64,000 nt of DNA from Laetmonice hystrix (taxonomy: Eukaryota). Below the pieces are notes generated by a model. It did not search any database. It had not been told where the DNA came from and was given only the letters and a program-made list of their open reading frames with translations. Of the stretch, positions 4,901 to 60,600 are shown piece after piece (the first letter of the stretch is position 1; each line of letters begins with the position of its first letter). The stretch spans positions 17,670,001 to 17,734,000 of the forward strand of contig OZ249444.1 in NCBI GenBank assembly GCA_965235115.1, read 5' to 3'. Both the position numbers and the translations under genes were made by a program.

Positions 4901-6591
4901 AATAGTACATTTGTGTACTACCAACTTAAAGGGAGCGGCTAGTGACTCTGAGTTCTAAACAGTATAGATGGCAGCTAAGGTCACCATTGGTGTGACCCGC
5001 AGCTCAGACAGACTCTTGTTATTGTCGTACGGTCTGGTAGATTCGCTATGATAACATTCCCATGAAATTTGATGGTAGAAACTAAAATTATATCACAATT
5101 CCTAACCCCAACCCTCACCTTCCTTCCCGTCCCCAGTCTTCAGAACAAAAACCCTTTCCGTACGGATCGCTTGCCCCTCACCCTAACCCCAACCCTCACC
5201 TTCCTTCCCGTCCCCAGTCTTCAGAACAAAAACCCTTTCCGTACGGATCGCTTAACCCTCACCCTAACCCCAAACCTCGCCTCCCTTCCCGTCCCCAGTC
5301 TTCAGAACAAAAACCCTTTCCGTACCGATCGCTTAACCCTCACCCTAACCCCAACCCTCGCCTCCCTTCCCGTCCCCAGTCTTCAGAACAAAAACCCTTT
5401 CCGTACCGATCGCTTAACCCTCACCCTAACCCCAACCCTCACCTTCCTTCCCGTCCCCAGTTTTCAGAACAAAAACCCTTTCCATACCGATCGCTTGCCC
5501 CCTTACCCTAACCCCAACCCTCACCTTCCTTCCCGTCCCCAGTCTCCCTCACCTTCCTTCCCGTCCCCAGTCTCCCGACAAAAACCCTTTCCGTACCGAT
5601 CGCTTGCCCCCTTACCCTAACCCCAACCCTCACCTTCCTTCCCGTCCCCAGTCTCCCTCACCTTCCTTCCCGTCCCCAGTCTCCCGACAAAAACCCTTTC
5701 CGTACCGATCGCTTGCCCCGCACCCTAACCCCAAACCGTACCGATCGCTTGCCCCGCACCCTAACCCCAAACCGTACCGATCGCTTGCCCCGCACCCTAA
5801 CCCCAAACCGTACCGATCGCTTGCCCCGCACCCTAACCCCAAACCGTACCGATCGCTTGCCCCGCACCCTAACCCCAAACCGTACCGATCGCTTGCCCCG
5901 CACCCTAACCCCAAACCGTACCGATCGCTTGCCCCGCACCCTAATCCCAAACTGTACCGATCGCTTGCCCCGCACCCTAATCCCAACCCCAAAATTCGTA
6001 GGAATGTTACATGGAGAAATGGGTATGACATGAGCCCGAGTACTGACCATGATATATGACCAGCTTCATGACAGTGCCGCGCACGGGGACTAGGGGGTCC
6101 GGGGACATGCCCTATACTTGATTTTGGATGAGGGGGAGGGTTACAGACCTCCCCCCCCCTCCCCGCCTCCGCACGGCCCTGCCATGGGACATCATCCAAG
6201 GCATGCCTCTTGGCTGATAGCTCAGCAACCAATAAAGACCTCTACATGTCTAGGCAGATCCTCCCGGATCGTATAGCAGGTAGAGTGTGATCAAATGAAG
6301 GAATTCCCCCGTTCCGCCTCGGCCTGTGGATCAATCTACGAACCCACTGACCAGTGTTGGAGCCCCTGGCACCGCGCGATTACAGGGGACTCGTTGGGAG
6401 TTAGACTCAGCAAGACCATCAGCGGTAGGCAATTGGAAGACGGCCGCCACATATTTTATGATCATTAGTAGTGGAGGGGCAAGGTGGGTGGAGAAACAGT
6501 CGGCAGTCAGGACTGGTGCTCCATAGAGCGAGTGGAGAGCAGCAAGAGAACGCCTACAGCCACAGTGACAGCCACGCTGTCTCTGGATCTC

Positions 6592-27600: not shown

Positions 27601-30600
27601 GATACCCATGGGAATGTTGACGAAATGACTAATGCTCTTGAAAATGGTTTGAGGGTCCTTACACACCACACACACACAAACATACAGTCCAACGACCTTT
27701 TCTTCGCGTTTCTGTCACATTCGGCCAGCTCGGTTTCCCAGTAGGAGAGAAAGTAGGTCAGCTTCCTAGTAGTCTGGATCATCTCAACAGAAACATTGAT
27801 TTTCCGGACGTGGTCAAGTCACAGTATTGACATGTAGTAATCAGCTTGGCTGTGCGCTAAAGGGCAAAAAAAGAACACCATATTATATTGAACAAGCAGG
27901 TCTAATGACTATATAGGGCTGAGGACAAGGAGACAAATGGTGGAGATAATACATGTAGAACAGAAATCTGTGCTATGTCAAGAAAACAAGGAACGTAGGT
28001 AATATATCCTGCCTGAGTGGTGCTCAGAGATTGCGGTTTCAGGCCCACTCCCTAAAGAGGATAGGATAGGCTCTGTCCCCTGTCGGAGGGCCTAAACACA
28101 TACTCTTCCTAGAGAGGTTAGGCTAGGCTCTGTCCCCTGTCGGAGGGCCTAAAGACACTCTCCCTAGAGAGGTTAGGCTAGGCTCTGTCCCCTGTCGGAG
28201 GGCCTAAACACATACTCTTCCTAGAGAGGTTAGGCTAGGCTCTGTCCCCTGTCGGAGGGCCTAAACACATACTCTTCCTAGAGAGGTTAGGCTAGGATCT
28301 GTCCCCTGTCGGAGGGCCTAAAGACACTCTCCCTAGAGAGGTTAGGCTAGGCTCTGTCCCCTGTCGGAGGGCCTAAAGACACTCTCCCTAGAGAGGTTAG
28401 GCTAGGCTCTGTCCCCTGTCGGAGGGCCTAAACACATACTCTTCCTAGAGAGGTTAGGCTAGGCTCTGTCCCCTGTCGGAGGGCCTAAACACATACTCTT
28501 CCTAGAGAGGTTAGGCTAGGCTCTGTCCCCTGTCGGAGGGCAGACACTCTCCCTAGAAGAGGTTAGGCTAGGCTCTGTCCCCTGTCGGAGGGCAGACAAT
28601 CTCCCTAGAAGAGGTTAGGCTAGGCTCTGTCCCCTGTCGGAGGGCAGACACTCTCCCTAGAGAGGTTAGGCTAGGCTCTGTCCCCTGTCGGAGGGCAGAC
28701 AATCTCCCTAGTGAGGTTAGGCTAGGCTCTGTCCCCTGTCGGAGGGCAGACACTCTCCCTAGAGAGGTTAGGCTAGGCTCTGTCCCCTGTCGGAGGGCAG
28801 ACACTCTCCCTAGAGAGGTTAGGCTAGGCTCTGTCCCGGGCCCTGTCGGAGGGCAGACAATCTCCCTAGTGAGGTTAGGCTAGGCTCTGTCCCCTGTCGG
28901 AGGGCAGACAATCTCCCTAGAGAGGATAGGCTAGGTGCTGTCCCCTGTCGGGAGGGCAGACAATCTCCCTAGTGAGGTTAGGCTAGGCTCTGTCCCCTGT
29001 CGGAGGGCAGACACTCTCCCTAAAGAGGTTAGGCTAGGCTCTGTCCCGGGCCCTGTCGGAGGGCAGACAATCTCCCTAGAGAGGATAGGTTAGGCTCTGT
29101 CCCCTGTCGGGAGGGCAAACAATCTCCCTAGAGAGGATAGGCTATAGGCTCTGTCCCATGTTCGAAGGCCTATAAAGACACTCTCCCTAGAGAGGTTAGG
29201 CTAGGTTCTGTCACACTCTTTCTAGAGAAGTTAGAGTAAGCTGCGTCCTCTCGGTACCGGTAGTATTGTCACCAGGGGCAGATCCAGAACGAGAAGAGTA
29301 TACACCCCAGGTCGTCCAGTACAGGTCGGACTGGTAACAAGGCCCATTACTTTGTTAATCCCCTTTTGTAGGGGAGCAGGGAGGGAAAACGTGGCCCCTA
29401 TAGCCACTAAATTCCATGTCTTTTCTCCGTTTCTATATAGGACCCATCTAGTTTGGGGCACTTCCTGTTGTATGTGCCTTCATTAGCGACCTGCTAAAAC
29501 TGTGTCAGGTGGAAAGTTGTACAGATCGAGGAAGAATATATTTGCACTACAGATTTCCTAAAAACCAGCAATGCTCCGCAGTTCAAGCACAGGTATCGTT
29601 GACGATTATTATACGAAATATTTTACTATGCAACACAATGAAGTCAGAGCTGAAATATCTTTAAGGACATTGTCCAGTTGAAACATTTCATTTAAATTCT
29701 CCAGGAAACTGCAGAACTCCACAGTAATGGCGTAACGTCCCAAGTTAGCGGCATACGTTGACCTGTATAGTGAGTTTAACATCAGATAATGTCATGTGTA
29801 CACCTAAAGCGACAGGGTATTATAATCACCGACACCCTGTGTCAATTAACATAGATTATCTAATTATCAGCGTAGTAATAGTAATTAATGTACCGGTTTC
29901 TGTCTTTGTATGTCCGTTGATCTGCTCGGAGTGTTTGTATAAACCTGCTCATAACGTTTTCATCATTCTCTGCTCGTGTACCACCTTATCAAGCTCATAA
30001 CTCCGTCAGATTGCATGGCTTTGTTTTGTAAATATAATCTAGGAGTTTGTCGTATGGAAACTGGCTCTTTGAACCATGAATGAACAATCTATCTCTATCT
30101 CTATCTCTATCGGTCTAACTCTCTAGTCTGTAATTTGTCTTTTATATATTGGCCGGGAAGAATTGGGGTCACTCCACATGGTTTTGTACCCCGCGATGTC
30201 GTGCTTTGTTAATGACAAAGGGTTTGAAGTGAGCCGGAAACATGCTCGCATATTGAAATCAGCATGTGTCACCATTAAGGATGTTATCATTTTAATCCCG
30301 CTGTCAGGGTAGATTTGTGCGTGAATGTAGGGTTCAGTTATAGGCGAAGTGGATTTATGCAGGTTTAATGCATTCAGTGTTGCATACATTATTATAAAGG
30401 ATTTAAAACGGATTAACTCAGACCAATCGCCTTACGAATGTTAAAATAGCTCTTCTATGGGGGTCTCTGAGCTACCCCCTGTCTCCTACCATACACACAT
30501 TATTATGACACACCAAAGTAACTTTGAGCTGGAGTGAAAACAGTGAGAAAGAAAATACTACCATGAGAGTAAAAAACATAATTGTAGGTCAGCCGCGTAA

Positions 30601-33600
30601 GGTCCAGACAATTAAGTGAGTAGAGCTCGGTATAACATGGTAGAGGTATAGGGCTTATCTCATGAATACAACTGACGGGTAAAACATGCAGGGATGGAGA
30701 CTGATATAGATCGAGCTAGGGTTGTCTGCTGTGTTATACAGGTCTCACAGTTCATATACAGGTACAGAACCAGGAGATAATACAGTGTGTACAGTGTATA
30801 GAGGTCGTATTCAGGACACGTGTCATACACGTGGGCGAGTCGTTCAGTGCCTGCAATGTTAATTCTTATACAGGTTTAGGACACAAAAAGACAACAGATT
30901 TTACCTTAGACTTGTGTTTCCCTCGGAAAATGTTTTCCTGTGTAACATTTCCAGTTTATTTAGTTGTATAAGGAAGGGACGGTCAATTTTTTAAACCTCC
31001 TTAGGTAGCAGAAATTGGACAAGGTGGTGGCGTCCAGCCCCCCAGTCCCGCGACGTCGATCTGGTTGGATGTCTATATTACTGGTATAATGTTGTTTCCC
31101 TCACGATACCCTTCGATCAGTGCCCTAAACCTATGATCCGTTGTTTGGTTACAGACTATGTGATGGGTGAGTCTGGATGTTCGCTGACGGTACTGGACGT
31201 AGCGGACATCCTCCAGGCTCGGTATGCACTCATCTCGGGCGGCAAGACAAGGAACGGTTCGCCTATCATCACCTTCCCCGACAACCCGACCTTACCCGAG
31301 ATCAGTGACGACCAGTACAAGGCAGTCGTCGACTACCTCACCTCTATACCCACGTACGTTCTCACTACTCATTGCTCTACAGCTCTACTCACTGGCGGAT
31401 CCGGGGGTGGTGCTGGGGGTGCACACTCCCCCTCGCCCCAAGTGCCCTTTTCTCTCACCCAAGTGCCCTTTTTTGGTTTGCAAATTGGCCTTTTCCATAT
31501 AGCACTCCCCCTTCTTGAAAATCCTGGATCCGCCCCTGCTACTACTGCTACTCCGTTGAATTTAGGCCATTTTGAATTCACTAGTTCAGTCCTACGTAGA
31601 TTAGTATTCTTCATCTATGTTTGTCATGAGAGATGTTGTCCATCATTGATTTGACTGTACTGTAATGAGATACAGTAAAGCGGCTAGCGTTTGTTATGAG
31701 TAAATGATAAAGTTGACATAATTTGACAACCAGCTTGGTTATAGAAGATGGGTTAAACCGTTACTTGGACGTTTCTGCCGCAGGTTACAGGAAGTTGACC
31801 TTGGGTTTGCACTGGTTGTTGACCGACGGCAATGTGGCTGGGGCGCCGTCAAGACCATGCTCCTCCGGATATCGGTAAGTCCTACACCATTGGTCTCAGT
31901 ATATAGCTTGGAAACGTTGAGAAAGTGGGTGATAACCCCCCCCCCTCCAGCCACATGGCTATCCCTTTGTTCCCACCACCTGTCTGCCTTGAATGAAATT
32001 GCATTCCAACTAGTGCTGACCGCTACATGTCCATGGCGAGTCTCCCCCTGCAGAGACTGGGACTACGCCAGAGCCCCCTGGTGGATAGTTAAGATACCAT
32101 CGTGGGCATAGATACAGATCTACCGTTGTCGTTGGTAAGGTGATAAGACTAAGGCATAACACTTGTAAACTGTTATTAAAAACATGATAAGAAAAGCGAA
32201 ACCCATAGTTATAAAATGCGATATTCCCTCCTTAGATGTCCTTTTTCTCTGGTTAAGAAACGGTAAGTTTGGTAATGAGATAATAATATTTTTTATTTGT
32301 TTTCTACCAGGGTTCGTTCCCAGGCCTGGTCCAGGAGGTGTTTGTTTTACGACCTTCTGGGTTCCTCCAACGAACCTTTACAGACATGGGATTCAAGTTT
32401 GTCAAGGACGACTTCAAGTTCAAGGTCAGTCAGTGTTAAAAATCTCGGTATGTAATTTTGGGGGGAAACAATCAAACATGGCTAAATTACTACATGTGTA
32501 AACGTGAATGTGTTAAGTAGAGTTTAAATGTGTTGATTTGTTTACTGCGTGTTTCTACCTACCAGCTCTGTGTGCGCCGTATACCACTGCAGGTGGTTTT
32601 ACCATTTTGTTTTCTCTGCCCGCCACCAGATGGTGAAAGCTTTTGTTTCCTCTACACGCCGCCAGGTGTTGATATATTTTGTTTCCTCTACCCGCCGCCA
32701 GGTGTTGATGTGTAGCAGTGTCGAGGAGCTGTACGACGCCGTGGCCCCTGACCAGCTGACAGAAGACCTGGGCGGTACCATCACATACAACCATCATGAA
32801 TGGATACAACACCGAGCCGTAAGTATTAAGCCTTACCATTCGGTACATACCATTTCACATAGATCAGTGACTGCAGATTGGTGCTGCCCTCTACCGCAGG
32901 AGGCGTGTATTACAGTCTGCGCCTATCTATTTCATACCGCACTCGATGGCGTTTTTATCACAGGCAGCAGTTACTTCAAGGATATCAGTTCATTACAAAC
33001 AAACCACTTTTACTTGACGACGCCTCGATTCCCGAGCCGCCTTTCACTGTTGCAAATGCTTTTGAGGTCTTTGCTTTTGTTGCAAGTTGTGTTCCCGAGT
33101 AGATTATGTTTTTCTTTCAAATATGGTCCTTGAAAAAAACCCGCCATTTGAAAGAATGCTTTATGTCAGGGATTCAAATCAAAGTAATTATGTAGAGAAC
33201 CGGACGGGCAACACTTACATACCATTTCGGATGTACGTGTGTCAAATAATCCTTGCCCTGAGGGGTTCGTGCAGTTATTACAGACAGATTGTATCAGATT
33301 ATGTTGATTACGTTCTCACAGGCATCCATTATGATGTGACATGAGTTTAATCCACGCATGCAATAAATATAACAAGAAACACGACAAGGATGAGTACAGG
33401 ATTTTGTACTTTTATATTTTAATCCCCCTCAGTCTGTTTTATAATTATTATATTAGTGTGTTGGGGTTGGGGGTGATGAGGGAGGTCCATGTTTTAGGTA
33501 TTGGAGGTAGCGCCATGTATAACACAATGGTCTCCCTGTGTTACCTTGACACCGTACAATGTACTTCCTGCTCAATGTTTACCAGCAGTAATTACCACCC

Positions 33601-36600: not shown

Positions 36601-39600
36601 CTCAGATATAATGTCAAAATTATTATTTATATTGATACGTATTATCATGCGCTTTGCACATCTGTGTATTTAGCACATGCATGATTTTGGGTCATATATT
36701 GAGTGTTATTGGGAATATGATATAAGTGATTACAAGCGGTTTCATCCTGTGACGGCTGCCACGTGTTCCTCTGACTCAGCCTCCATAGTTTATCTGCCCG
36801 GGCTGGCCCAGGTCAAAGGCTAGGAAAATAGATTATTGACACAGCACCATAGGTATACAGCATAACTTTGAGCACCAGTATATTAATGTATTGTCCTAAT
36901 GGGACTCCGTACCGTGCTCACTGCGCCTTTGTTGAAACCGTTCTAAAAGAAACAAAAGTTAAGCCCTCAATGAAACCAGTAATTAGCTTTAATCTTTGGC
37001 CCTTTGTTCCCTGTCCTTTTGTGGTACGACTTTAATTACGTCTGGCACTCGACCGCCAACAGTGCCATGTCGGTAGGGGTGACAGGGGAGTTTGCTTTGG
37101 CGATTAGAATTATGTAGTTATATTTATAAATCCCAGGGAAGCCCCTAGCCATGAGGGGCTGTGAGTGGGGTCCGTTAATATGTACATAATGTACACCCAT
37201 TGTTAACTCTACCTGGTATGTCAGTCTGACAGAATGTAGTGAATCAGATGGGGTAGTGGGTGCTGCAGAGTCAGGTACGTGTAGATTAGTCTGATAAGAA
37301 CATTGAGTAACTTTTGTTTACCTGAGCCAGATTATGACAAGGATTATTGGTTAACGTTGGTAAATTGATCGCCCACGGGATAAGTGTGATCAAGAGGTAG
37401 GCTTGTGAAGGTATTACAGCAGTGCGTGTGAAAAGTTGCTTCATATAACTAGTTATAATAATGTTTGCCCCGCTAATTGTTCTGCTTCACTTTACACTTT
37501 TCACTTCACAGTAATTGTGCTTCACCTTTTGTTGGTAGGGAAAAGACGAATTATCTCAACAAGGTTTTATCCCTTTTTTCTGTATTTGTTAAAAGAGGGG
37601 AACATCTGCCACATGAAATTATGGTATTATATAGTATGGGTGTGTGAGATGTATCCAATTGATGTTCTGATATAGCCATTATATTGGTACAGACAATGGA
37701 GGCACCCTTGTTTGACTGTGTGTACTTGTGACGTGCTGGGGCGAGGGGGTCGGCACTGTCACGGCAGACTGACGTCACGTGAAGCCGACGGACATCTAGG
37801 CTTGGCCGCGCCGACGGCAGTCCTACCTCAGTGAGGTCCTGGCACCCACAATCAGCCACACGCATCAAACACGGACACGCACTGGCTTGGTACCACGTGT
37901 ACCTCATATACAGTACATGAGGCTGCTTTTACATCTTTATGAGATAGGCATGAAAATTATGGCAACGCAGGTATTTTTATTCGTTAAGTTTGCTTTGATA
38001 CTGGCATCGTTAATTTTTATGCGATTTATATTTTGTTGTTGGCATGAAGGAATTTTAACAGTTCTAATTTTATCACATTACATCCCGATGGGAGTAACTA
38101 TTATTAGTACTTTATTCAAGATCAATTTAATATATGTAACTTAAATTGTTTTTTTTTAAAATAAAATACAAAAGGAAGATATGCTTGATATTAGATTAGA
38201 CCTTTTGAAATGTGGAGGGGGGGGGGGGGACATCCCACGCCTTGCTAAAATACCATGCTTATAGTGCCATATCTGTTGTTCACATATTATGTTTATGTGA
38301 CATGCTGTGTTTATGTGACATACAGCATTTAGAAAATCAGGGGGCTTTTTTAACAAAGAATTGAAGCTATTTTTGCTTTTTAAATATTAAAATTAAGTGC
38401 TTCATTATGGATACGTGTCTTTCAACTACCGTTGCATTCAGGTTAGAGAAATATAGACTGTATCAATTTTGTAGCTTCGAATTGCCAGAAGGGTTAAAGA
38501 GGTCATATTCATGACAATACTGGTGAATTCGTGATTAGTTCTATATTGTCCCTTGCACAGGTCAGGGTGATATTACCGGGGGACACAGGATATTGGACGT
38601 GCGTCATCACAAACTTAATAGATGACAGAGGTAGAATTACAGCGTCGTGGGCGTGCTTACACGGAGAACTTTGGAGAACTGCAGTGAACAGTGAGGCCTG
38701 CAGAACGCCTTGTACTGTGTACGTCTATGATGGTTTGTTGTTAGGAATGTGTTGTGGATGAATTGATCAGGCAGTCTGTAGTCTCTCAGTTAGTAAATGT
38801 TGACTATTCGTGGTGTATTGATTAAAGTGCACGCTCATGAACACACCTGTGACCAGGCATGTGTCACAGACTGCAGACTAGGCGTGGTACAGTCATTCTC
38901 CTGTCCATCAATATGTCTGTCTGATAAATCCACCTGTCCATCAGTGGCCTATCATGGATAGAAATACTCGGTCGGTGAGCTCCTTGGGTTCCCATCCGCT
39001 AGCAGTATGTTTGGGTGACGGTCAAATTTTATACCAAGATCGCTTTGTATTAACGGGAACGGTAGTTAACTCTAGCCAATACGAGTTGAACAATATAGCA
39101 GTCTTCTGAAAGTACAAATGTACACCCAAAATGTCAGCACTAAAACCATATGAAAATTTCGAAGGGTATAAGGGGTTCTAGATATCGTAGGAACGACAGA
39201 ATGGGTTTGGATGTACGTTTGACGACAGAGTCGGGATACATGAATGGGTTTGGATGTACGTTTGACGACAGAGTCGGGATACATGAATGGGTTTGGATGT
39301 ACGTTTGACGACAGAGTCGGGATACATGAATGGGTTTGGATGTACGTTTGACGACAGAGTCGGGATACATGAATGGGTTTGGATGTACGTTTGACGACAG
39401 AGTCGGGATACATGAATGGGTCGGGATGTACGTTTATCTGATAGAGAAACATCTACTTTGGTTTAAGTACTGGGGATATTGACACCTGTTTACTCTGTTG
39501 TCTAGCTCGGTAGCTTGTTGCATAACAACACATCCAAGGTTGGAAAGGATGATGTCGTCGCGTCTTTGTCGCCATGGTGATACCGGTCAGGGTCAGAAAC

Positions 39601-42600: not shown

Positions 42601-45600
42601 CCATAGGCTTGTAACGTTCAGAACACTGAAATGCTAATATTTGGTCTAAACGAATCTTTACCACCGTCGTTCTCCGCATACATTTTGGCTGTATTTTTTG
42701 TCAAAAACCTGCCCTATTGCTACCCCACAAAGTCCGTCGACTCCCCTCCGACATGAAACAGATCAACATGGCCACGGTCAAAACGAAAACAAATGGTGAC
42801 TGGGCGTGTGTTGTGGAATGGTTGTGGTAATATTGTATGCACGTTGTCCTGCAGGTGAAGGAGGACCTGAGCAGTACCATCAAACACGGTGACGTGCTCC
42901 TCACGTGTTTCAAGAGTGTACGGACAGAGGCCGGCCAGGAGGAGGTGGTGTCTTCCTCCCTACTCCCCTCCAGTAAACTCGCACACGTCACTGCCGTAGA
43001 AAGGTAAGTCGGGACAAACTCTTCTCATGTTTTGGTTTTTTTAAAAGGGTGCATTTTTTCAGGTGTGTGTGTGTGTGTGGGGGGGGGGGTCTGATGGAGA
43101 AACCTCTGGAGCCACTGTTCTTTTATAATTCAAGATTCTCGAGTGGGTCTCTCCTACCTCCCTGAGAATGTTTCTGTTGGACTCCTTACCCCCCCCCCCC
43201 TCCCACCTCAACCCCACAAATATCAGATTTTGTATTGGCATGACAGAGTAGAGGTTCTGTCATGTATGACAGTAACCTACAGTCTATGGGATTGAAAGTT
43301 TAAAGCTAATATCTGAGTTCGTTAACAATCAAACATATCTCGACTGTCTAACCGGAAGTAGACAGAAGTGGTTACTCTTGCTGATTCAGTGTGAATCATC
43401 CTTTTATTGGTTATTTTCGATAGAAGGCAGTGCGACCATAGTATCAAGATTTATCTCAAGGATTCAGATTAAGGGTCTGTGGTAGGGCCCAGTGTAGACC
43501 TCTATACCAGGGTATAGGTGCCGTGCACAATGTATACTGTCCTGCAGGGATAAATAGACATTTCTACTGGGAAAATACTTATTTATAATTACACGTATTA
43601 GAAGGACTCATCAAATATATATCTGTTCCAGTAATACTAGGTCGTGCGCGTACCATTTCAAGTTTCCAGGTACGAGTACTAGATGTGCTTCAGCATCAAT
43701 ACACACGGCCAGAAAAAACGAGCTCAGGTTGTTTGTGGAAAGGAAACTATTTCGGTCAAATACAACACGCCACGCGTTTTTACACCAGGAGCACTGTGAA
43801 CGCGCTTACTTCATCAACTCCAAATCGACAGACCAAAAACTTTAACTGAGAAAAAAGGGGGATAATACTTTTTCTTTGAAGACTTAAGAGTCTTACCTTT
43901 GGCCCAGGGGATTCCATATTATCTGAGAAGTAGAATGCAATAAAGAAGTTTGTTTATGTGGCGTTGAATACAAGGATCTGTGCCGCCTGTCTGTCTGATT
44001 GATTAAGACATGATGGTTTTATTTTTCTACCCCTTGACTTGCTTCCAACCGACTTACGTCACAGCTTTGCGGCAAGTGAAACTTTTTCCCAGTTTCCCTG
44101 TCGTATTTCGTTATGCCGACTCTAAGACCATCAGGTGAACGCTTTGGCTTCATCCATAACAGTTGAATACCTACGAGGTGCTACACCAGGGCTAGAGCTC
44201 AGAGTCTCTGTGTGTGTGGCTCACGGTAGGCAGCCTCGCGAGTGTGTACGTTAGCGAGGCTTGTTGACAACAAGACCACAAATTAGTATGAGAATACAAT
44301 TATTATTGTCAGTCGGTGGTAAATTAGTAATGCATGTTATACCGTGTTGTACTCTGGCCACGGGTTATATTTACCTCAAACGTATTGGAGGACTGGATGA
44401 ACTGAGAGTGTTGTCTTCCCGCCAATGTTATAGTTGGAAGGTTACGGGTGTTAGTGTAAAACAGAGTTGTTTAGTAAAGCCATGATTTCCACGTGATGCC
44501 AGCTCTCAGACGGAGACTGGTATAAGTATGCTAACTGCCAGCCGGACGGTAATCACCGGGGTAGATAATCTCTTCTTCCTTGTAACTGAGCTGGCGGAGT
44601 TCATTGAATTCAACCGTTTCTCAGTCGTCGGTGTACTTGGTAAAGGCGACCAGTCTACTCGTTAAGACGCTGAGAGCGGAGAGATCTGCTGCAGAGTTCA
44701 GACCCACTCCTGGCTGTGGATAATTGAGACTCGGTAAAGGCGACCAGTCTACTCGTTAAGACGCTGAGAGCGGAGAGATCTGCTGCAGAGTTCAGACCCA
44801 CTCCTGGCTGTGGATAATTGAGACTCGGTAAAGGCGACTAGTCTACTCGTTAAGACCCTGAGAGCGGAGAGATCTGCTGCAGAGTTCAGACCCACTCCTG
44901 GCTGTGGATAATTGAGACTCGGTAAAGGCGACTAGTCTACTCGTTAAGACCCTGAGAGCGGAGAGATCTGCTGCAGAGTTCAGACCCACTCCTGGCTATG
45001 GATAATTGAGGGATGAGACTAACATCGACCTCAGATTGGCCCAGCAGCGGCTGAAATAATGTCAGGATGGCTGCGGCGAACAGATAGGTTGTAAGGGGAA
45101 ACAGTGCTGAAACCTACCTGCGAACAGGATACGGCACGGTGGGGTGCGGTAGGGGGGCTAAATGAAGGATAAACGGTTTGTATCTTTAACATATCTTGGG
45201 GTAGGGCAAACAGAAAGAAATAATGATGTGTTTACAGTGAAAGCTTTGACCTAACAAGGGATTGACTGGACACAGTTGCTGATCAGTGTTGATGACAATC
45301 TTTAGTCTGAGATCATTAGGATGAATCCAGTGGAGAAGACTTCCTGCAGTTCCTCCAGGCACGTTGATCTCTGACCTCCGAACCACCAAGGTCACTGACA
45401 GACCTTTATGTGTTAGTTATATTGACGTCTGAGACGAAATGTCAATTGTCCTGACCTTTGTTTATTGTTACCATGGAGATGTAGGGCAATACTAACGACA
45501 AGAACATGTCATTGAGGGGATATTTACTGGATGACTATATTTTCATGTCAAGGACATCCATTATTCATCATGTTTGGTGTGAGAGTGTAGATACGGAGAA

Positions 45601-51600: not shown

Positions 51601-54600
51601 ACAGTGGGCACCGATCTGATAACTTACCATACCGGCCACTGGTATAGATAGGAAACCACGGGAAGGCACCTCATCCTCGAAACACAAGTACAACTGACAA
51701 AAATATCTGTTTGTCCAGCTTAACCGTACCATTTTCAACTTGCTTCCTAATGTTCTTTTTCTGTTATTCTCCTACCGTGTATGATGTAGAAAAAAGTACC
51801 GAAAAAAATCAACTGCTGATATTGGAAGTGTAGTATAACCAGTTATCGAACAAGATGACCCGTGGGTTGTGTTGAGGCCCTCAGGTTGAGTACATACCAA
51901 TACCCTAAAATTATACCGTCCCAGCGCCCAGAGGTTCACCCACCTCCACCCAGGTGGCACTGCCTGTCTGTTCGATACCCAGCTGGAGTGACACGGCCCC
52001 CTGGGTGAAGGAAGCGCCACCTACCGGGCCAATGATCAACTAATGAACCATTGGACACCCTATGAATCCTCGGAATGACCGTGCCAACAGATAAAACTGG
52101 TAATTTGCGGTGATTTATTTTTTACTAGATATCCTTGCTTTGATAGTGACAAAAAGATCTAGCAGCACCCATTTTTCAAACCGCAGTGTATGGAAAACGT
52201 GAAAAAAAAGTCTGCTGTTGAAGTTCGTTATCTGTAGGATTGAACGGTTTAGGTCAGAAGTAGTTCAGTGAGACGACGAGCGCAACGTCATGCAAAACTT
52301 TATGACAAAAATTAGTATCGCATATACCGGCATAACCAGTAATTAGTGGTTCAATAACCGAATCATTTAGAGTCTGTTAATGCATCCAGTCAAAATAGGA
52401 TTCCGGCCATCATCATATTTAGAATCAAAGAAAGATTATGATTGTTATATAAGCGTTCATTTTACTGATGTATTTTGAAAGTTAGCTGTTAATTTGAGCA
52501 ATTGGTAGAGACTTAGATCTATAACAATATGTATATTGAACCGACATAGTCTCCTAGACGTCTACTCCGACACATTCTCCTAGACGTGGTCAAGAGGAAC
52601 GGGATGGAGCAGACTGAACGCTCTGCCACCCCCACCCCTCCCTCCCCGCCGGCCCACCATGTGGCTGTAGTCAACCTGATGGGCCCTGATGGGGTGGATA
52701 CCATGTGGTACAGGGGGTTGCTGCCCCTCCCAGCTCAACCAATCCCAGCCCCGCCGTCCAACCTTTAAACAGTGGACCCGGGCTCGGGTGGTGTAGTAAC
52801 ATCGTCTCCAGACCTGCTGCTGGTCGTGTTACAGAGAGATTCGTATACCGCCTCACCGCTCGTCACCGTCACCGTGACTGTTAGCGTTACTCTCGGCGTG
52901 ACGGTCACCGTCACGTCCGTCATGGGAGCCGTCAAGGTTAAACTCCAGCCACTGGACTCATGACATGTACACGTGGTGGTTTGTCCTTGAGAAGACGTGT
53001 CGTCATGAGAACCAGAGCCTTACGATATGGTTCACCTTCTAAAGCCTGGAGCTTACTTGGTGGACGGATGGCTCCCTCGTACCGTCACCACACTACACGA
53101 ACGACTACAGACAACATTGTACTTGGCATGGACGTGTTGCCGTAGCAACCTCATCGTATGATCTACAATATGAGGCGTGCACGATTTCTTAAAATATCTG
53201 AAAAAACGGAGGTTGTTTTCAAGGAGAGCTTCTCGGCGGAGATAAGAGAGACCTATGGGTTAGTGGAAATACGAGTGCAAAAAGTCGCCAAACGATATAT
53301 CTCACCTCAGTCAAATTTTCAAGTGAAAACATCTGTGAAGCTTTTAGGGAAAAAACAGCAAACCTACACCAGGATAATTGCCTCGGGCAAGCTTGAAGTA
53401 GGGAACGGAGGTAGCAAGTACATAGGTTGAGGTGAAAAAAAGGAATGCCTTCGGTGAAGTAGGAGTTTCAATAACCATGGCGCCTCAGAAGTATCAGCCA
53501 GGGTGTTCAAGGTGGAAGGCTTCTATCTGACGTTGACGTGATCTTTGCCATGATCTTTTACCGGTCAAAATGATCTTCACGGATAATCAGTACACACGTG
53601 TCGGCAAAGAACTAAACATTTTACTAGAATACGTGCCGCGATAGAAACGGCAGGTACTGGTGCTGACCTGGGGAAACTGCCAACGTACAATGTGTAGTAC
53701 TGTCATACAAAACTAATCGATGATGCCTTGAACCGATGTTTGAAAGTCGATAAACTATGAGATCTGAGAGACGTGTTTGAAGTTCTGGTGGTATCCAAAC
53801 GTATCCGACTGATGACAGTTTGGCACGCCGTGGTATCTGGTGTCGGAGATTTAACAGAGAAGGAAGCCGAAGTGGAGAGAAGTAATCCAGATGTTAAACG
53901 CTATAAAGATCCTTTATTATGCCATACATAAGATGTAGAGGTTGTCCAGACAGGGTGTACCTGAGGAGACAACCAGATCAATACGGTGCGGTAATTAGAG
54001 CGGTGAGGTGGGGTGGATGTATTATCGTGATGTGAGGGCGCGTCTGGCCGACTGTATCCAGCAGGTGGCGCGGCGGTCGGAACAAGTCTTCCAGTGGCTG
54101 GCAGTCGGAGCGTGGCTGGCTGTGGCCGTCGTCTTCTACAGGATGATGGCCGACGTGGCCGAGCTGCTCAGCATCGCTCTCCATAAGATCACCGGCCTCG
54201 TTCTGGCCGTCGTCATGGGGACACTGCTGTGGAAGGTCTTCCGGTATGTTATGATTGGGTGGGGCAGGATACCTGTGTGTATGCAGACAGGTAACTTACC
54301 CACCTTGTCTCACCTGAGCAATAATTTTGCTATCACGAGTTGGCTACGGAATAGGTCTTGCTCTGTTTCATCTACAAGTTCAGTCAGACCTTTGTTATTT
54401 AGCCACTTTCCTTTTTAGCAATTTCCTCGTTTTCATCCAGGAAAAATGCCAAGTCTCAGGCGTGGCAAACTATTTTAAAGATATAGCCTATGCTGGGGAG
54501 GGACGGGAAATACCAAATACTCACTTTAGGAATAAGACCTAGACGGAATTTTCTCGGGGGTACCAGTACCCCCCCCCCCCCGTCCCTCTAGGTTCCGACC

Positions 54601-57600
54601 CACCTTCAGTACAGACAAGAAGATGAAAAGAACCAGAGTTGCGAGATGAAACCCTAGAATGCTATCCGCATATTCTGTATTGACACTGATAGAGTAATCT
54701 TGAGGGAGTGGATTGGTAATTAAAGGTGAACCACCTGTGAGACAGGGCCCCCATGTGCACATAACCTGTTGAGAGCAAGTAAACAAGTAGAACCTGGTTA
54801 GTCGGTAAGTGGATTTCCCTGCTCACCCATAAAGCCGACAAACTGGGTCGTCCAGGTAATGGCTACTGTTGTTGTGGCTTGTAATTACCTACACCTGGTA
54901 CCGCCTCGGTTACCATCAACATCTTTCTGACGGGCTTTGTGGCTTGTGTCAACCGAGGTACAATGTACATGGCGTTTTATATTTAACTCTTCCCACTTAT
55001 GCTTAAATACAAAACTGCATGACAAAGGGTATCGATAACTGTGGTATTAATATCAATTTTTGGTCTCGCACAGACTTACACCGGGTCAATAGTATGGAGC
55101 GGGCGTTAGGTACGGTATATAAGAGCCTTCAATCATCATCATCATCATCATCATGAGCAGCAGCAGCAGCAGCAGCAGCAAAAATCACCTTAAAAATACA
55201 CAATTCAGTGGTGGCTCAATGCTTTGGGACTGGGAGAATACTTACTGATTTACAAAATGGTGGATCCTAGAGGGATCAAGCCAAAAATTACATTTAAACA
55301 AATGAAGATTCGGCTCCAGACTCCCCAGTTTTCCCTATACCCCTCCCGATCGCTCCCTGGTTTTTTGTAGTATTCTATCTCTAAACCATTGAAATTTCCA
55401 ATTTGGTAAAGTGTACTCCATCATCAGTGTGAATTTTCCATGTTATTTTGGTTGACATTTGTAGAAGATGTATTGTATAAAAAGCAGTGTGCCGCTGTGG
55501 CCTGCCCGGTGTGAGTGTAGAAGGTGTGCCGCTGTGGCCTGCCCGGTGTGAGTGTAGAAGGTGTGCCGCTGTGGCCTGCCCGGTGTGAGTGTAGAAGGTG
55601 TGCCGCTGTGGCCTGCCCGGTGTGAGTGTAGAAGGTGTGAAGAGTGCGGTATGCGGTAACCCGGTGGATTCCGTTACAGTAGATAGAACAAAGGGAGGTG
55701 GTGGTGGGGGGAGGGGTTGGGGTCGTGTTTGTTTGGGTGTGGTGTGAGGAGGGGTGCCAGAGGTAGCCGGGAAGTGTTTGGGTAGATGAAGTGGCAGGAG
55801 GCCGAGATGATACAGCTGACACGGTCCGCCATACCAAACATTCCCTGCTCGCCGTCACCCAGACACTACAAGGGCGCCCATTGAGGTTCTCACTCTGATC
55901 TTTTACTGATTTGGGATAAAAAAAAAAAGGGGGGGGGGAGTGGTGGTAGCCAAACTTGTATTCATACCACCTTGAAATAATAGAGCTGTTCTCCTTTCTA
56001 GTAAAATGCCAATGCTGTGTGCGTTACCTTTCGTTATGCCAGTATTGAAATGTTGGCAGATGCGGATGATCGATGAGCCAGTCCCTCTCCCAATAAAATG
56101 AGGGATTCGGTCATTTAGTTTAACAAAGGCTGCACCCCTTAGAATATCGGAATGTCTGGTGCCAGGCAAGTTTTAGCGATTGGCACTGGTTTAGCAGAAG
56201 TAGAAACTGGCAGTTGAGGTGGTGAGCTCGTTGTGGGCGCTGAAGTTTTGAGACTTTGTTAGCAGCTGGTGTCTGTGAGCCTGAACATGGGAGACCTCGG
56301 TGTGACGGCCACGGAATCCAGGAATTAGTGCCCTCTGGCGGCAGTCTGTCGCCACCACCGAAGACGGTCTCATAGAAACACTAGCGCCCCCACCGGTCGA
56401 TCAATAAGTAACAATCTCAGTGAGCTCCACCAGGCAAAAATGTGATGTGGAAATCTGAAACTCTATCGGTTGGAAACCAATTACGTGCAAGAGTCGTGAC
56501 TGCACTTGGTGTCAGGAGCTGGGGCCCAGATAGGGTGGAGCTATAGTGAAAGTTTCACTATTTTTAGGTTGCCCTAATGTCCACTGGAGATTGTCAAATA
56601 GCTGAAGGTCCCAATTGAGCAATGGACACCGTGGAGAGACCTTTTGTCAATAAAATAAGATCAAGTGCCGGTTGACGGGGAAATTGCCAGTCTGGGTTTT
56701 CATCAGAGTAGGTGTATAGCACAGGTCAAGTGGAACGGTTGGGACAGGACGGTGTTGACCAGGACCGGTGGGTAGTGGTCCCTACAATTACTGCCTCATT
56801 GGTATGCTAATTGTGGACCATTGTCGTGAGAGGGACAGAGACAGCCCTGAGGTGAAGTGCCACGCTAAACGTTAATGGACTGGGGGTGTGTGATTGGGGT
56901 GAACGGTTTCACCCCACACGTAGGTTTAGGGTGACAACAGATCGGCAGACCACCCTCATTCTAGTTCTAGTGTGAGGGTTGAATCTTTTGGGAGCAAGGA
57001 ACGTGGATGGTATCTTACCCTGAAAACTGGAGGTTGGTAGAGTTCGCAACGAGAGATGAGCAGCAAAGAGTTGTCTTGGAGTTTGGTGTGCAGCTGAATC
57101 ATACTGTGAAGCTGAAAGAGTCTGCCTCCATTTCAAGTGCAGTTCTGAGATGGTGACGAGTTGCTTGCATGTCACTCAGGATCCTAACCTTGTATCTCTG
57201 CAGGTTACTGGTCCAGCTAGAAGAAACAGAACGTAATTTTGACGACTTCTGGAATCAACATGAGCAAAGACTTCAGCAGTGCCTGCAGTTACGAAAGTTT
57301 GAGGAAGAATTCAAACAGGTCAGTTTCTATGTGATCATCTTAACCAGATCTAGATTTAAAAATAACCTTTCCGTTCATCTCCCGTGTTACTTTCTGCAGG
57401 TGACATCTTGTATATATTGATGCACTGAATATGACGGAATTCTTGTCTGACCCGTATGAAAACATATTGAATACAACGTATTATGGGTCCATCCCGCATT
57501 AGGAATAAACGTAGAAAAAAGCGACATCTCTTGCTGGAGTTTGTGACGTGGTATGTTTTGGTCTGTAGGTTCAGTACACAGTAGAGCGACACGAAACGAT

Positions 57601-60600
57601 GCTGGAGACGATGTCGGACACGGGCGATTCTATATCACGCGTAGAGCACCTGCTGAAGGAACTGGCAGACTTTGAGGATGAGTCAAAGGTCAGTCTTTGT
57701 CATGTTAGAAGGTCAAAGATCAACAGTGCTGGTATTAGAACAGGTGCAGGAAACGATCTAGGTCTAGCAGGCCTGGTATTATAATGGTAGCTTGGATCGA
57801 AAGTCAGCGCTGAGGTTTTGGTATCAATCAGTGTTACGTCCTGACATTCTGGAAATCGCATAAATGAAAATCTGAGGTTCTCTGCATGAGTCAAACTAAG
57901 GTTCTACAGTCCACAACTGTTTTACATCGTAATGCGACCTTTCTTTCCTTGTTTTGAAATGAACCAAATGATTTGTTAAACGATCCCTGGTATTGATGTT
58001 GCCAGGAGGACATAATGAGAGCGGAGCAGTTAAAGAGTACAGGAGACCAACTGATTGAGGACGACCATTATGCTGTAGACTGCATTCGTCCTAAGTGTAT
58101 TGAGTTACAACGTATGTGTGCCCAGTATAAGGAGATGGTTAGGGCACGGTATGAGGTCCTGAACCGGGCGCGCGACCTCCACGACAGGATAGATAAGGTA
58201 TACCATATATAGAGTTACTATCCAACCTCGACCCACTGTGGTTAACCAGGGAACATTGCACTGGAAGGAGGTCTTCTCAGACACAGGCAATTTCTGATAC
58301 ATAGGAAATGTTAACAAAGAATCAATACAGGGTTCATACACATAAGGAATGATGTTATCATGGAATCTTTGAAAGATGTTAAAATGTACCTTTGGAAGCA
58401 AACATTATCTGGTGGTAGGACACAAATTCAGAAAGAGCAAGCCCTATTTCTGTTAGCGTACATATATTATAATATTGGTTGTGAAATGTTTTCTGACAGA
58501 TGTTGACGGTAATTTGTCTGTTTGATATTCTCAGGCCAACAAGTGGTGTACACGTGGGGTGGACCTGCTGGCCAGCCAGCCCATAGACAAATGTAACACA
58601 CCAGGTGGCGCTGAAGACGCGCTGGGCGAGCTGCAGGTCTTCCTCAACACGGCCGACGATCTCAAACTCAACAACCCCAAGGAGTTCAGGACCCTGTTTG
58701 AGACGATGATCACACCAGATACAAAGGTCAGAACCCACGCCAGTATAAACAAAAATATCGTACCATTTGAGATTTACCTCAATACTGATTGTAGGGTTCA
58801 AGCTAGGGACTAGCCACCAAGTGAAAATTTTACGAAAATGAACTCTTCAAATTTGTTTTTAAACACACTTGTTTTCCTTGTCATCCTTTTAATTTCATGC
58901 CTTTAATAATAATTGTGTATTTACAGAACGCAGTCCAAGAGGTTCTGAAGAGGATCGAAGATGTCCAGAGTATGTGTGACAAGCGGCGTGAGACCCTCAA
59001 AAAGCAGGTTGCCAAGGCCAACCGTCCGGTACAGCCGGTCACCCCAGAGCCAGCCACACCCATCCACAAAGTTCCAAGTTCTCCCTCCATAGACTTTGAT
59101 AAGAAACGGAAAAAGTCCACTAACGGCATGCGGCGAGGCAGTAGTTCAAATAAGGTGAGAACCAAAATCAACTATCCAATACTTCATTTTCACACTCTCC
59201 AACTTTTTATTTTGAGTAAAGAAAGTCTTTTATGACTGTTTTGAACGCCTCTTAAAGTTTAAATTGCGTCCGGTTTTACGATCCAGAGGGACGTGTATGT
59301 CTCAGTTTTCACTCTTCCAATGTCTGTCCATTTTCCTTCTCTTCAACTATAGCCAAGATCTCTCATTCATAGGTATTTGACTCTAGCTACAATCAGCACT
59401 GGTAATTCCTGTAATTACTAGCAGTTCTCCCCTCTGTCTAGTCTGCTGTATGATTTCAAGATGTTGACCTGTAGGTGTGGTAGAAGTGGTTAATGTTGAG
59501 GTGCTCTTACTGTTACAGTTAGGGGCTCGTATTGAGGTGGTACGTGACGGGAGTCTCAGTGACAGTAGTGGGTCTGTCGACATTGACACCACAGATTGTC
59601 CCAGCGGGAAAAAATCCGATCCCACCAGGGAACTGGATACCCTACACGCCAAACGAGGGTAAGTGATGTTCTGCAGCATTTTCAAATATATTTTCATGTG
59701 TGGTGCTTTTGGTGGAGTTCGTATGTAAAGATCAATGTGTCGATACCTACAAGAGATCCCTCACTTACTGGTTTATCTGGCAAGGCCACTGTCTCTATTT
59801 TACGCTGAAACTACACAAAGAAATTAAACATTAAATCGTGTTTTTTCTTTAACCTCAGGGATGAAACCAGTCAACGGTGGGTTAGAGGGCATGTGACTGT
59901 GTCTGTTGCAGTTATAACGTATTAATTAGGCCTCCATCAGTTAACTATAAGGCATGGTAGCTGTTTTACCCCATCTATCCAATTTATAATTAAGGTAGTC
60001 TGCATTAAGTCACACCTTTTGCAATGTTATGTAAGATGTCATCTTCAGGAGTTATGTTTGCCTCAAACAATACGATAGAGGTTTCTTTTTAGGGCAATAT
60101 TTAGAAAGGTACATTTAAGCGTAAATGCATCCCTTAGAGGTCTTGCATTTACAAGTTCGTCAAAGACTTTACAAAAGTTCAGTAAAGACTGCAGAATCTT
60201 CACCCATCCATACTACCGTAGTTCATGAGGTGACCCTTGTGTTGATATGTAGGACTTTGGTGTCGAATGGAAGCTTCATTTTGCGGGGTCCCAGTTCCAC
60301 GTTATAAATCTCACTAAATAGTTGCAATGTGCATTATTTATATTTTGACATTTTTATTTGCTCTTAGTCTTAACATTATGCTGTTAGCTTGTGAAATGAA
60401 TTATTATTCTTAGGTTTTATTACTGAATGAGGTTTTCGGTTTGTGTGAGTCCAAACGATGCTTGCCGGATTGCTTGACACATGCCTAACCATGAATAGCT
60501 TATGTACCATTTATATGGTCGAGCATTGTGAGCATTTTATTGGCCCTGTATAAATGTGTCTGTCCGTGTTAAATTTCTAGCCTCCTTTTGTGTGAGATAA

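What the first reader, a model, noticed from the sequence alone, without database searches (positions are those of the whole stretch)
54017..54243. Alternative first exon encoding a two-pass membrane hairpin fused in frame to spectrin-DH-PH: a predicted integral-membrane Dbs-type RhoGEF
Seen: MYYRDVRARLADCIQQVARRSEQ-VFQWLAVGAWLAVAVVFY-RMMADVAELLSIALHK-ITGLVLAVVMGTLLWKVF-R|LLVQLEETE. Two ~18-residue apolar segments flanked by basic residues; codon usage far more GC3-rich than the surrounding intron; upstream in-frame stop; consensus-like donor in the required phase 2. Established: Dbl-family GEFs are generally peripheral proteins targeted by PH/Sec14 domains or lipidation. Inference: a hairpin keeps both termini cytosolic, so this cassette would replace the Sec14 module with a permanent organelle anchor. 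I do not recall such an isoform for this family but cannot search.
Basis: partly seen in the sequence, partly recalled or inferred. Interest (0 to 1): 0.85.

Follow-up and report, generated by a model that had tools for sequence, protein, structure and literature searches.

The report
Conserved hydrophobic first exon of Dbs-like RhoGEF
Inside a long intron of an invertebrate Dbs/MCF2L-type Rho activator gene lies a small coding exon, kept in three species, that would swap the usual lipid-binding head for a very greasy, membrane-anchor-like head; no RNA data could be found to confirm it is used.

Summary
Window 54017-54243 (+) is an ATG-started, 75-codon open frame plus two bases. It has an in-frame stop 6 codons upstream and a GTATGT donor, in the same phase as the constitutive exon it would replace. 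It is single-copy in its genome.

Two other species carry the same exon at the same place, 1.25 and 3.1 kb upstream of the orthologous LLVQLEETE exon. Both keep the GTnnGT donor, and the split codon stays Arg through three different codons (CGG, AGG, AGA). Synonymous sites are saturated (pS 0.59-0.88) while pN is 0.25-0.30, and 0.13-0.17 over the last 26 codons. The flanks are no more alike than shuffled sequence. So it is a real coding exon under purifying selection, almost certainly spliced to 57204.

All three species keep the same hydrophobic pattern: an apolar 14-18 residue segment, an amphipathic 16-residue linker, and an apolar 18-residue segment.

Topology is not shown:
- AlphaFold gives one unbroken helix.
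- Flank charges are inconsistent between species.
- No TM predictor was available.

No RNA run exists here for this organism, so splicing and promoter use are inferred. I found no paper describing an integral-membrane Dbl-family GEF. The verdict is a new variant of a known kind.

The parts
53996..53998 (+). In-frame TAG, 6 codons upstream of the ATG. It closes the frame to any upstream exon.
   Evidence: Stops also lie directly upstream in L003 and 25 codons upstream in L005.
54017..54243 (+). Alternative first coding exon: ATG, 75 codons, then the first two bases (CG) of a split Arg codon.
   Evidence: Orthologues are L003:10001-10260 and L005:5294-5514. pN is 0.25-0.30 against pS 0.59-0.88.
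54017..54094 (+). N-terminal flank (codons 1-26). Its length (24-37 aa) and sequence are not conserved. It only supplies an in-frame ATG upstream of the first apolar segment.
   Evidence: Alignments. Nucleotide identity here is at shuffle level.
54095..54139 (+). Apolar segment H1 (codons 27-41; 18 residues if VFQ-W is counted from codon 24). It is hydrophobic in all three species. A29 and W33 are invariant.
   Evidence: KD15 1.95-2.06, hydrophobic moment 0.01-0.10.
54140..54187 (+). Amphipathic 16-residue linker (codons 42-57) with invariant M43, A48, E49, S52, L55, H56, K57.
   Evidence: hydrophobic moment 0.45-0.59.
54188..54241 (+). Apolar segment H2 (codons 58-75), the most conserved part. 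15 of its 18 residues are identical in three species, ending GTLLWKVF.
   Evidence: pN 0.13-0.17 over the last 26 codons; KD15 2.19-2.37.
54244..54249 (+). Splice donor GTATGT (GTAGGT in L003, GTCTGT in L005). G+1, T+2, G+5 and T+6 are kept, while the intron beyond is unalignable.
57204..57318 (+). Common spectrin-repeat exon that the alternative exon should join. Its first base completes the Arg codon, and LLVQLEETERNF... follows.
   Evidence: It is 92% identical in L003 and L005.
42855..43003 (+). Constitutive upstream exon that normally joins 57204. It ends AG|GTAAGT, the same phase 2 and the same split Arg.
52800..53950 (+). Possible promoter region (inference only). CpG observed/expected is 0.94-1.14, which reaches the top 5% of the window. 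A TATAAA lies at 53902-53907, 110 nt before the ATG.
   Evidence: No comparable CpG rise is seen in L003.

Best explanation
Window 54017-54243 is a conserved alternative first coding exon of a Dbs/MCF2L-type (Sec14-spectrin-DH-PH) RhoGEF gene.

How it would work. Transcription would start in the 14-kb intron between the exons at 42855-43003 and 57204-57318. Translation starts at the ATG at 54017. The exon is spliced from 54243 to 57204. The product has a roughly 76-residue N-terminus in place of Sec14 and the first spectrin exons, followed by the rest of the spectrin region and the DH-PH catalytic unit.

The new N-terminus. It is a variable 24-37 residue lead-in followed by a conserved hydrophobic module of about 50 residues: an apolar helix, an amphipathic linker, and an apolar helix. 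This module most likely embeds the protein permanently in a membrane. The likeliest form is a helical hairpin that leaves the catalytic part in the cytosol.

Likely consequence. In Dbl and Dbs the Sec14/spectrin part is autoinhibitory. This isoform would therefore be both tethered and de-repressed.

Shown: exon conservation, frame, donor, phase and hydrophobic pattern.
Inferred: promoter, actual splicing, membrane insertion, topology, which membrane, and activity.

Sub-odds: real coding exon 0.9; spliced to 57204 0.8; membrane-embedded given that 0.65; two-pass hairpin given that about 0.6.
For: 1. The sequence features are as described.
2. It is single-copy.
3. An exhaustive HMMER search found one true relative, P0001. 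It is an 87-aa ORF that stops exactly at the donor.
4. P0001's contig L003 and a third species' contig L005 carry the exon 1.25 and 3.08 kb upstream of the orthologous LLVQLEETE exon, on the same strand.
5. The donor dinucleotide and +5/+6 GT are conserved. The phase is conserved. The split codon reads CGG, AGG and AGA, all Arg.
6. There is a coding signature. Differences by codon position are 23/5/32, 23/11/21 and 18/7/30. pN is 0.25-0.30 against a saturated pS. The flanks are at shuffle-level identity, and the introns are not found by blastn.
7. Each species has an ATG just after a stop and upstream of the first apolar segment.
8. The hydrophobic architecture is conserved, with non-amphipathic apolar segments.
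9. The host gene is Dbs-like: PF23289 E 1.1e-12 and PF00621 E 8.4e-10.
10. The family is known to use alternative initiation exons with membrane-active front peptides, and removing Sec14/spectrin de-represses MCF2 and MCF2L (PMC9823006).
11. The listed variants in other genomic contigs of the organism avoid 53884-54359. The two listed variants that fall in constitutive exons are synonymous. This is weak support.
Against: - No RNA evidence of any kind. No RNA run holds this exon or even the constitutive exons, and no transcript-derived protein with the fusion was found.
- AlphaFold2 on the 3-sequence alignment gives one continuous helix over residues 2-74, with no hairpin turn.
- The first apolar segment is short (14-15 residues) in two species. 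Summed Hessa-type insertion energies are slightly positive: +0.85 (H1) and +1.5 (H2) over 17 residues, +1.7 at best over 19.
- The net charge of the N-flank is +2, +4 and -2, so positive-inside is not consistently met.
- The N-terminal 25 codons are unconstrained, and the -3 position before the ATG is T in the window and in L003.
- A more distant relative (L008) shows no such exon in the 7.8 kb upstream of the orthologous exon, so the exon is lineage-restricted or lies further away there.
Confidence: 0.55

Rival explanations
1. The exon is real and spliced to 57204, but its hydrophobic module is not a two-pass bilayer hairpin. It could be a monotopic wedge or lipid-droplet-type anchor. It could be a single-pass signal anchor using only H2. 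It could be a long helix that packs against the truncated spectrin bundle or drives oligomerisation.
For: AlphaFold models one unbroken helix over residues 2-74. H1 is only 14-15 apolar residues in L003 and L005. In L005 the linker is also largely apolar, giving a hydrophobic stretch of about 49 residues typical of monotopic anchors. Flank charges are inconsistent between species. The downstream exon is itself a spectrin helix.
Against: H1 and H2 have almost no hydrophobic moment (0.01-0.15), unlike the helices of soluble bundles. Both reach the Kyte-Doolittle threshold for membrane spans. A single N-in span would put the GEF in the lumen, away from Rho GTPases.
Confidence: 0.2
2. It is an independent nested gene for a small hydrophobic protein of about 75-90 aa that merely sits in the RhoGEF intron and is not spliced to the RhoGEF.
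For: In L003 the genomic frame stops at once after the final Arg. In L005 it stops 7 codons later. Gene callers called the L003 ORF as a stand-alone ORF. No fusion transcript or protein is on record.
Against: In the window the genomic frame runs on for 60 unconserved codons. The third base of the last codon and the next base (G, T), plus +5/+6 GT, are kept in all three species although synonymous sites are saturated. Conservation ends exactly at the donor. Phase and residue match the constitutive junction. The position upstream of the same exon and the strand are kept.
Confidence: 0.12
3. The exon is transcribed and spliced, but as a non-productive or differently joined exon. It could be a 5' exon of a transcript that skips to another acceptor. 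It could be an internal exon entered from upstream exons, where the upstream stop would trigger decay.
For: There are no RNA data.
Against: Protein-level purifying selection in the + frame argues that the frame is translated. No polypyrimidine/AG acceptor precedes the ATG in any of the three species. Phase 2 fits the next exon in all three.
Confidence: 0.08
4. It is a chance open frame or a conserved non-coding element.
For: The frame is short and GC-rich. The N-terminal third is unconserved.
Against: Three-species conservation with third-position-biased change, a conserved hydrophobic pattern and unalignable flanks.
Confidence: 0.03

Closest known systems
Alternative initiation exons ('front peptides') of SecSR RhoGEFs: Kalirin Ex1B/Ex1C, and MCF2L isoforms 4 and 9 (PMC9823006)
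   Same: It is the same gene superfamily (Sec14-spectrin-DH-PH). Alternative first exons give different N-terminal peptides. Kalirin Ex1C and some MCF2L front peptides are hydrophobic or amphipathic helices that touch membranes and redirect localisation.
   Different: Those peptides sit in front of an intact CRAL_TRIO/Sec14 domain and are amphipathic, peripheral binders. Here the exon enters downstream of Sec14 and the first spectrin exons, so Sec14 is lost. Its two main segments are uniformly apolar and of membrane-span length. There is no sequence similarity to anything outside three related species.
p63RhoGEF versus GEFT: one gene whose N-terminal variants differ in constitutive plasma-membrane anchoring (PMC3722567, abstract listed)
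   Same: It is a Dbl-family GEF whose alternative N-terminus decides between permanent membrane residence and cytosolic residence.
   Different: From my own knowledge, not checked here, p63RhoGEF is anchored by lipidation, so it is a lipid-modified peripheral protein. Here a protein-encoded hydrophobic module would do the anchoring. The gene subfamily is also different.
N-terminally truncated, activated Dbl/Dbs (oncogenic forms lacking Sec14 and spectrin; PMC9823006 citing Kostenko et al. 2005)
   Same: Loss of Sec14 and part of the spectrin region, which in mammals relieves autoinhibition through the Sec14-PH contact.
   Different: Those are experimental or tumour truncations. This would be a natural, conserved isoform that adds a membrane anchor and keeps most spectrin exons.
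Sec12-type integral-membrane GEFs (for Sar1). This is the only sense in which 'transmembrane GEF' appears in the searched literature.
   Same: It is the idea of a GEF fixed in a membrane so that its GTPase is activated only there.
   Different: The fold and GTPase family are unrelated. Sec12 is a single-pass type II protein, not a Dbl-family protein.

Membership tests
Dbs/MCF2L-type SecSR RhoGEF (host gene) | DH (RhoGEF) catalytic domain | tested here: met
   The exon at 62326-62529 hits PF00621 with E 8.4e-10 and 39.6 bits, against a cut-off of 27.6.
Dbs/MCF2L-type SecSR RhoGEF (host gene) | DBS-like spectrin region between Sec14 and DH | tested here: met
   58526-58720 hits PF23289 (DBS-like spectrin-like) with E 1.1e-12 and 48.3 bits, against a cut-off of 27. 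The hits to PF00435 at 41702 and 57997 are weak.
Dbs/MCF2L-type SecSR RhoGEF (host gene) | N-terminal CRAL_TRIO/Sec14 domain | tested here: inconclusive
   The single 60-aa exon piece 31181-31360 gave no Pfam hit. The exon-like frames at 31.2-33.0 kb look like Sec14 by eye only.
Dbs/MCF2L-type SecSR RhoGEF (host gene) | PH domain after DH | tested here: inconclusive
   It lies at or beyond the window's end. In a close relative's contig the downstream ORF carries PF22697, SOS1_NGEF_PH.
Alternative first-exon front-peptide isoforms of SecSR RhoGEFs | Own ATG exon spliced in frame into a common exon | tested here: inconclusive
   The comparative evidence is strong: ATG after a stop, a conserved donor, phase and split Arg in 3 species. 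No RNA is available to show the junction.
Alternative first-exon front-peptide isoforms of SecSR RhoGEFs | Front peptide lies immediately upstream of the CRAL_TRIO domain | tested here: not met
   The exon lies 21 kb downstream of the Sec14 exons and joins the exon at 57204, bypassing Sec14 and the spectrin exons at 41.7 and 42.9 kb.
Alternative first-exon front-peptide isoforms of SecSR RhoGEFs | Amphipathic helix (peripheral membrane binding) | tested here: not met
   H1 and H2 have hydrophobic moments of 0.01-0.15 with mean hydrophobicity 0.70-0.85. Only the linker is amphipathic, at 0.45-0.59.
Two-pass helical-hairpin membrane anchor (N-in/C-in) | Two apolar segments long and hydrophobic enough to span a bilayer | tested here: inconclusive
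   The window has 18 + 18 residues. The relatives have 14-15 + 18. KD19 is 1.59-1.68 for H1 and 2.10-2.13 for H2, against the usual threshold of about 1.6. The simple Hessa sums are +0.85 (H1) and +1.5 (H2) over 17 residues, and +1.7 at best over 19. No dedicated TM predictor was available.
Two-pass helical-hairpin membrane anchor (N-in/C-in) | Turn or loop between the two spans | tested here: inconclusive
   A conserved 16-residue amphipathic linker exists, but AlphaFold2 models residues 2-74 as one helix without a break. A model made without a membrane cannot settle this.
Two-pass helical-hairpin membrane anchor (N-in/C-in) | Positive-inside charge distribution | tested here: inconclusive
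   N-flank net charge is +2, +4 and -2. The linker is 0, -1 and +1. K and R flank the end of H2 in all three species.
Two-pass helical-hairpin membrane anchor (N-in/C-in) | Experimental membrane integration | not testable with these tools
   Needs carbonate extraction, protease protection and localisation.

The most novel reading that the evidence does not exclude
This is the first Dbl-family RhoGEF isoform that is an integral membrane protein. It would be a natural, conserved Dbs variant in which a gene-internal promoter replaces the autoinhibitory Sec14/spectrin head with a two-helix transmembrane hairpin. A de-repressed DH-PH unit would then be fixed permanently on one endomembrane or on the plasma membrane.
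Probability: 0.35. Interest if true: 0.7.

Novelty: new variant of a known kind. Interest (0 to 1): 0.55.

Why it matters
Dbl-family GEFs are understood as peripheral proteins. They are brought to membranes by PH, Sec14 or BAR domains, by partners, or by lipidation. Where they sit decides which Rho GTPase pool is switched on.

A survey of Dbl-like GEFs in 175 genomes does not mention transmembrane segments at all (PMC5499878). Phrase searches of 8.4 million papers found no integral-membrane RhoGEF.

If this isoform is made and inserted, it would be a natural experiment in permanent tethering combined with loss of the autoinhibitory head. It would also show how a lineage-specific new exon, with no relatives outside three species, can re-address an old signalling enzyme.

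If it is not inserted, it remains a sound annotation of a conserved alternative first exon.

Tried and rejected
- RNA evidence. Two run searches, one on the exon region and one on 2.1 kb of constitutive exons, found only three runs of one sample, and none is on record as RNA. Laying those runs gave genomic contigs across the introns and no joints, so they say nothing about splicing.
- Wider homology. An exhaustive HMMER search of 1.84 billion representatives gave one true hit plus two repeat-protein artefacts, P0002 and P0003. A profile search and a longer-range region search of the 90% clusters added nothing. The ESM Atlas gave no usable hit. The only Pfam match was a sub-threshold one to DUF2304 (E 0.009, 16.7 bits against a cut-off of 25.5), which I reject as hydrophobic-helix noise.
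- More relatives.
  - Contigs L006, L007, L009 and L010 come from a more distant group, with an exon about 57% identical. Their upstream exons lie outside the 10-kb flank, so they are uninformative.
  - L008 has the orthologous exon but no alt-exon match in the 7.8 kb upstream.
  - L011 and L012 are too short.
  - The closest relative's contigs (P0004) had no DNA on offer.
- Annotated full-length isoforms of relatives could not be searched. A spliced query has no reference, and the length filter excludes full-length proteins from short queries.
- Promoter evidence. The raised CpG o/e and a TATAAA are only suggestive and are not seen in L003.
- AlphaFold of the exon peptide gave a single helix. 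I take this as uninformative about topology, not as evidence against membrane insertion.
- No complex prediction was attempted, because no binding claim is made.
Full report
**The observation**

It is an ATG followed by 75 sense codons and then CG. An in-frame TAG lies six codons upstream, at 53996-53998. The bases after 54243 are GTATGT.

The acceptor ...tctctgcag|G at 57203/57204 supplies the third base of a CGG Arg codon, and the frame continues LLVQLEETERNF. The constitutive exon that normally feeds this acceptor is 42855-43003. It ends GAA AG|GTAAGT, so it has the same phase and also makes Arg across the junction.

GC3 of the exon is 0.80. The gene's other exons have 0.45-0.73, and the surrounding sequence is about 0.46-0.49 GC.

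Two uniformly apolar stretches lie at codons 24-41 and 58-75. Their Kyte-Doolittle means are 2.06 and 2.19 over 15 residues, and 1.68 and 2.10 over 19. Of the 302 stop-free stretches of at least 60 aa in the window, two have such a pair, and this is one of them.

The peptide has a single copy in the 627-Mb genome, so it is not a repeat.

**The host gene**

On the + strand the window carries these exon-like frames:
- Sec14-like frames at 31.2-33.0 kb.
- Spectrin exons at 41.7, 42.9, 57.2, 57.6, 58.0, 58.5 and 58.9 kb.
- The start of a DH domain at 62.3 kb.

Pfam gives PF23289 (DBS-like spectrin-like) at E 1.1e-12 and PF00621 (RhoGEF) at E 8.4e-10, both above their cut-offs. The candidate exon lies in the 14-kb intron between 43003 and 57204. 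An isoform starting there lacks Sec14 and the first two spectrin exons.

**Comparative evidence**

This is the core of the case. An exhaustive HMMER search of 1.84 billion representative proteins found one real relative, P0001. It is 87 aa, has E 1.1e-10 and is 56% identical over 50 residues. Two other hits were repeat-protein artefacts. P0001 ends exactly with ...GTLLWKVFR.

Its genomic contig (L003, with L004 from a second run of the series) shows why. The exon ends AG|GTAGGT, so the genomic frame reads AGG TAG. On the same strand, 1.25 kb downstream, lies the orthologue of the 57204 exon. It is 92% identical, with acceptor ...tatttgcag|G TTG CTG GTG CAG.

Using a constitutive exon as a handle, I fetched contigs of further relatives. 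A third species (L005) has the exon at 5294-5514, with donor AG|GTCTGT. It lies 3.08 kb upstream of the orthologous exon, whose acceptor supplies A.

The split codon is therefore CGG, AGG and AGA in the three species, always Arg. The donor keeps G+1, T+2, G+5 and T+6.

**Selection**

- Over the last 50 codons, the pairwise differences by codon position are 23/5/32, 23/11/21 and 18/7/30.
- pS is 0.59-0.88, which is saturated. pN is 0.25-0.30, and 0.13-0.17 over the last 26 codons. The constitutive exons show pN 0.03-0.17.
- Global alignment identity is 0.65-0.70 for the last 152 nt of the exon, against 0.55-0.57 for shuffles.
- The 300 nt of intron downstream and the sequence upstream of the conserved block are at shuffle level, apart from one L003-L005 interval at 0.63.
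- blastn finds only the constitutive exons.

This is the signature of a translated exon whose 3' end is a functional donor.

In each species an ATG upstream of the first apolar segment follows closely on an in-frame stop: 6 codons in the window, 0 in L003 and 25 in L005. No pyrimidine-tract acceptor precedes it. That fits a first coding exon.

The N-terminal 24-37 residues are not conserved in sequence, length or charge.

**Breadth**

The exon is present in the 3 species where the region could be examined.
- In L008, where the common exon is 76% identical, no match exists in the 7.8 kb upstream. The exon is absent there or lies further away.
- Four contigs of a more distant group did not reach the relevant exons.
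- Two contigs were too short.
- Another agent's note calls this genome mollusc-like. I did not test that.

**What the peptide is**

The alignment of the three sequences shows a conserved module:
- H1 is apolar and 14-18 residues long, with A29 and W33 invariant.
- The linker is 16 residues with invariant M43, A48, E49, S52, L55, H56 and K57. It is amphipathic, with a hydrophobic moment of 0.45-0.59.
- H2 is apolar and 18 residues long, with 15 residues identical in all three.
- K-V-F-R follows H2.

H1 and H2 have almost no hydrophobic moment (0.01-0.15), unlike the helices of soluble bundles. That favours burial in a membrane.

Several points count against a simple two-pass reading:
- H1 is short in two species.
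- Crude insertion free-energy sums are slightly positive.
- The N-flank charge varies (+2, +4, -2).
- AlphaFold2 on the three-sequence alignment gives a confident single helix over residues 2-74, with mean pLDDT 88.6 and no turn.

A model without a membrane cannot decide this. No TM predictor was available. I therefore commit to 'hydrophobic membrane anchor, most likely a hairpin with the GEF in the cytosol', and I keep monotopic and single-span variants as a serious rival. The cytosolic orientation of the GEF is argued from function, since Rho GTPases are cytosolic-face proteins. It is not argued from data.

**Expression**

No RNA run of this organism is on record in the index, either for the exon or for 2.1 kb of constitutive exons. 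The three holders are genomic. Their contigs cross the introns at 35-54x depth and show no joints.

A by-product of that call concerns variation. Among the listed differences between those contigs and the window, 20 fall in 53500-55124 and none in 53884-54359. The chance of none in the 227-nt exon is about 0.06. The two listed variants inside constitutive exons are synonymous. The list was truncated, so this is weak.

Upstream of the exon, CpG o/e is 0.94-1.14 over 52.8-53.9 kb, reaching the window's top 5%. A TATAAA lies 110 nt before the ATG. L003 shows no CpG rise. A promoter is inferred, not shown.

**Comparison with what is known**

SecSR RhoGEFs use alternative initiation exons. Kalirin Ex1C encodes an amphipathic helix that binds phosphoinositides and sends GFP to the Golgi. 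MCF2L isoforms 4 and 9 have a predicted amphipathic front peptide. [quoted passage not shown]

Human MCF2L has 21 predicted coding isoforms (PMC4653905). p63RhoGEF and GEFT are N-terminal variants of one gene that differ in constitutive membrane residence (PMC3722567).

The present exon works like these in that an alternative N-terminus decides placement. It fails two defining features of the front-peptide class. It does not precede Sec14 but replaces it, and its main segments are not amphipathic.

A survey of Dbl-like GEFs in 175 genomes never mentions transmembrane segments (PMC5499878). Phrase searches for transmembrane, integral or tail-anchored RhoGEFs found nothing relevant.

**Verdict**

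The exon is real, conserved and coding, and it is very probably joined to 57204. The integral-membrane hairpin reading is plausible and conserved in pattern, but it is untested. It is a new variant of a known kind (alternative-N-terminus RhoGEF isoforms). It is of moderate to good interest, and its value depends on an RNA junction and a membrane-insertion test.

Noticed in passing
window 1708-1920 (+): A stop-free 71-aa frame rich in acidic residues and Trp (…DLEEFATQLKDEF…). It has no Pfam hit.
   Followed up: no
window 5066-6241, 28571-29090, 39075-39480: Three tandem-repeat blocks read open in several frames. Their units translate as PNPNPHLPSRPQS-like, EVRLGSVPCRRAD-like and a 43-nt-periodic MGLDVRLTTESGY-like repeat. 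The first is also the window's strongest CpG o/e peak, at 1.3-1.5.
   Followed up: no
L011:2797-3366: In one relative (ENA metagenome scaffold, exon 70% identical) the last spectrin exon, the linker and the start of the DH domain form a single 190-aa open frame. It hits both PF23289 and PF00621. Several introns present in the window (58.9-62.3 kb) are therefore absent there.
   Followed up: partly
L007:11123-11311 and 11371-11454: The orthologue of the 58.5-kb spectrin exon is followed 60 nt later by a second copy of its last 28 codons. This is a partial tandem exon duplication in a distant relative.
   Followed up: no
P0002, P0003: The two other HMMER hits are 566-613-aa products of tandemly repeated units of about 50 residues from unknown contigs. 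They match the query only over short hydrophobic/Arg-rich words, and I judge them spurious.
   Followed up: partly
window 57186-57960: One of the three genomic runs (X3) has almost no contig cover here, while the other two are covered at 28-43x. This is probably an assembly drop-out at a heterozygous stretch. There are many differences in 57225-57826.
   Followed up: no
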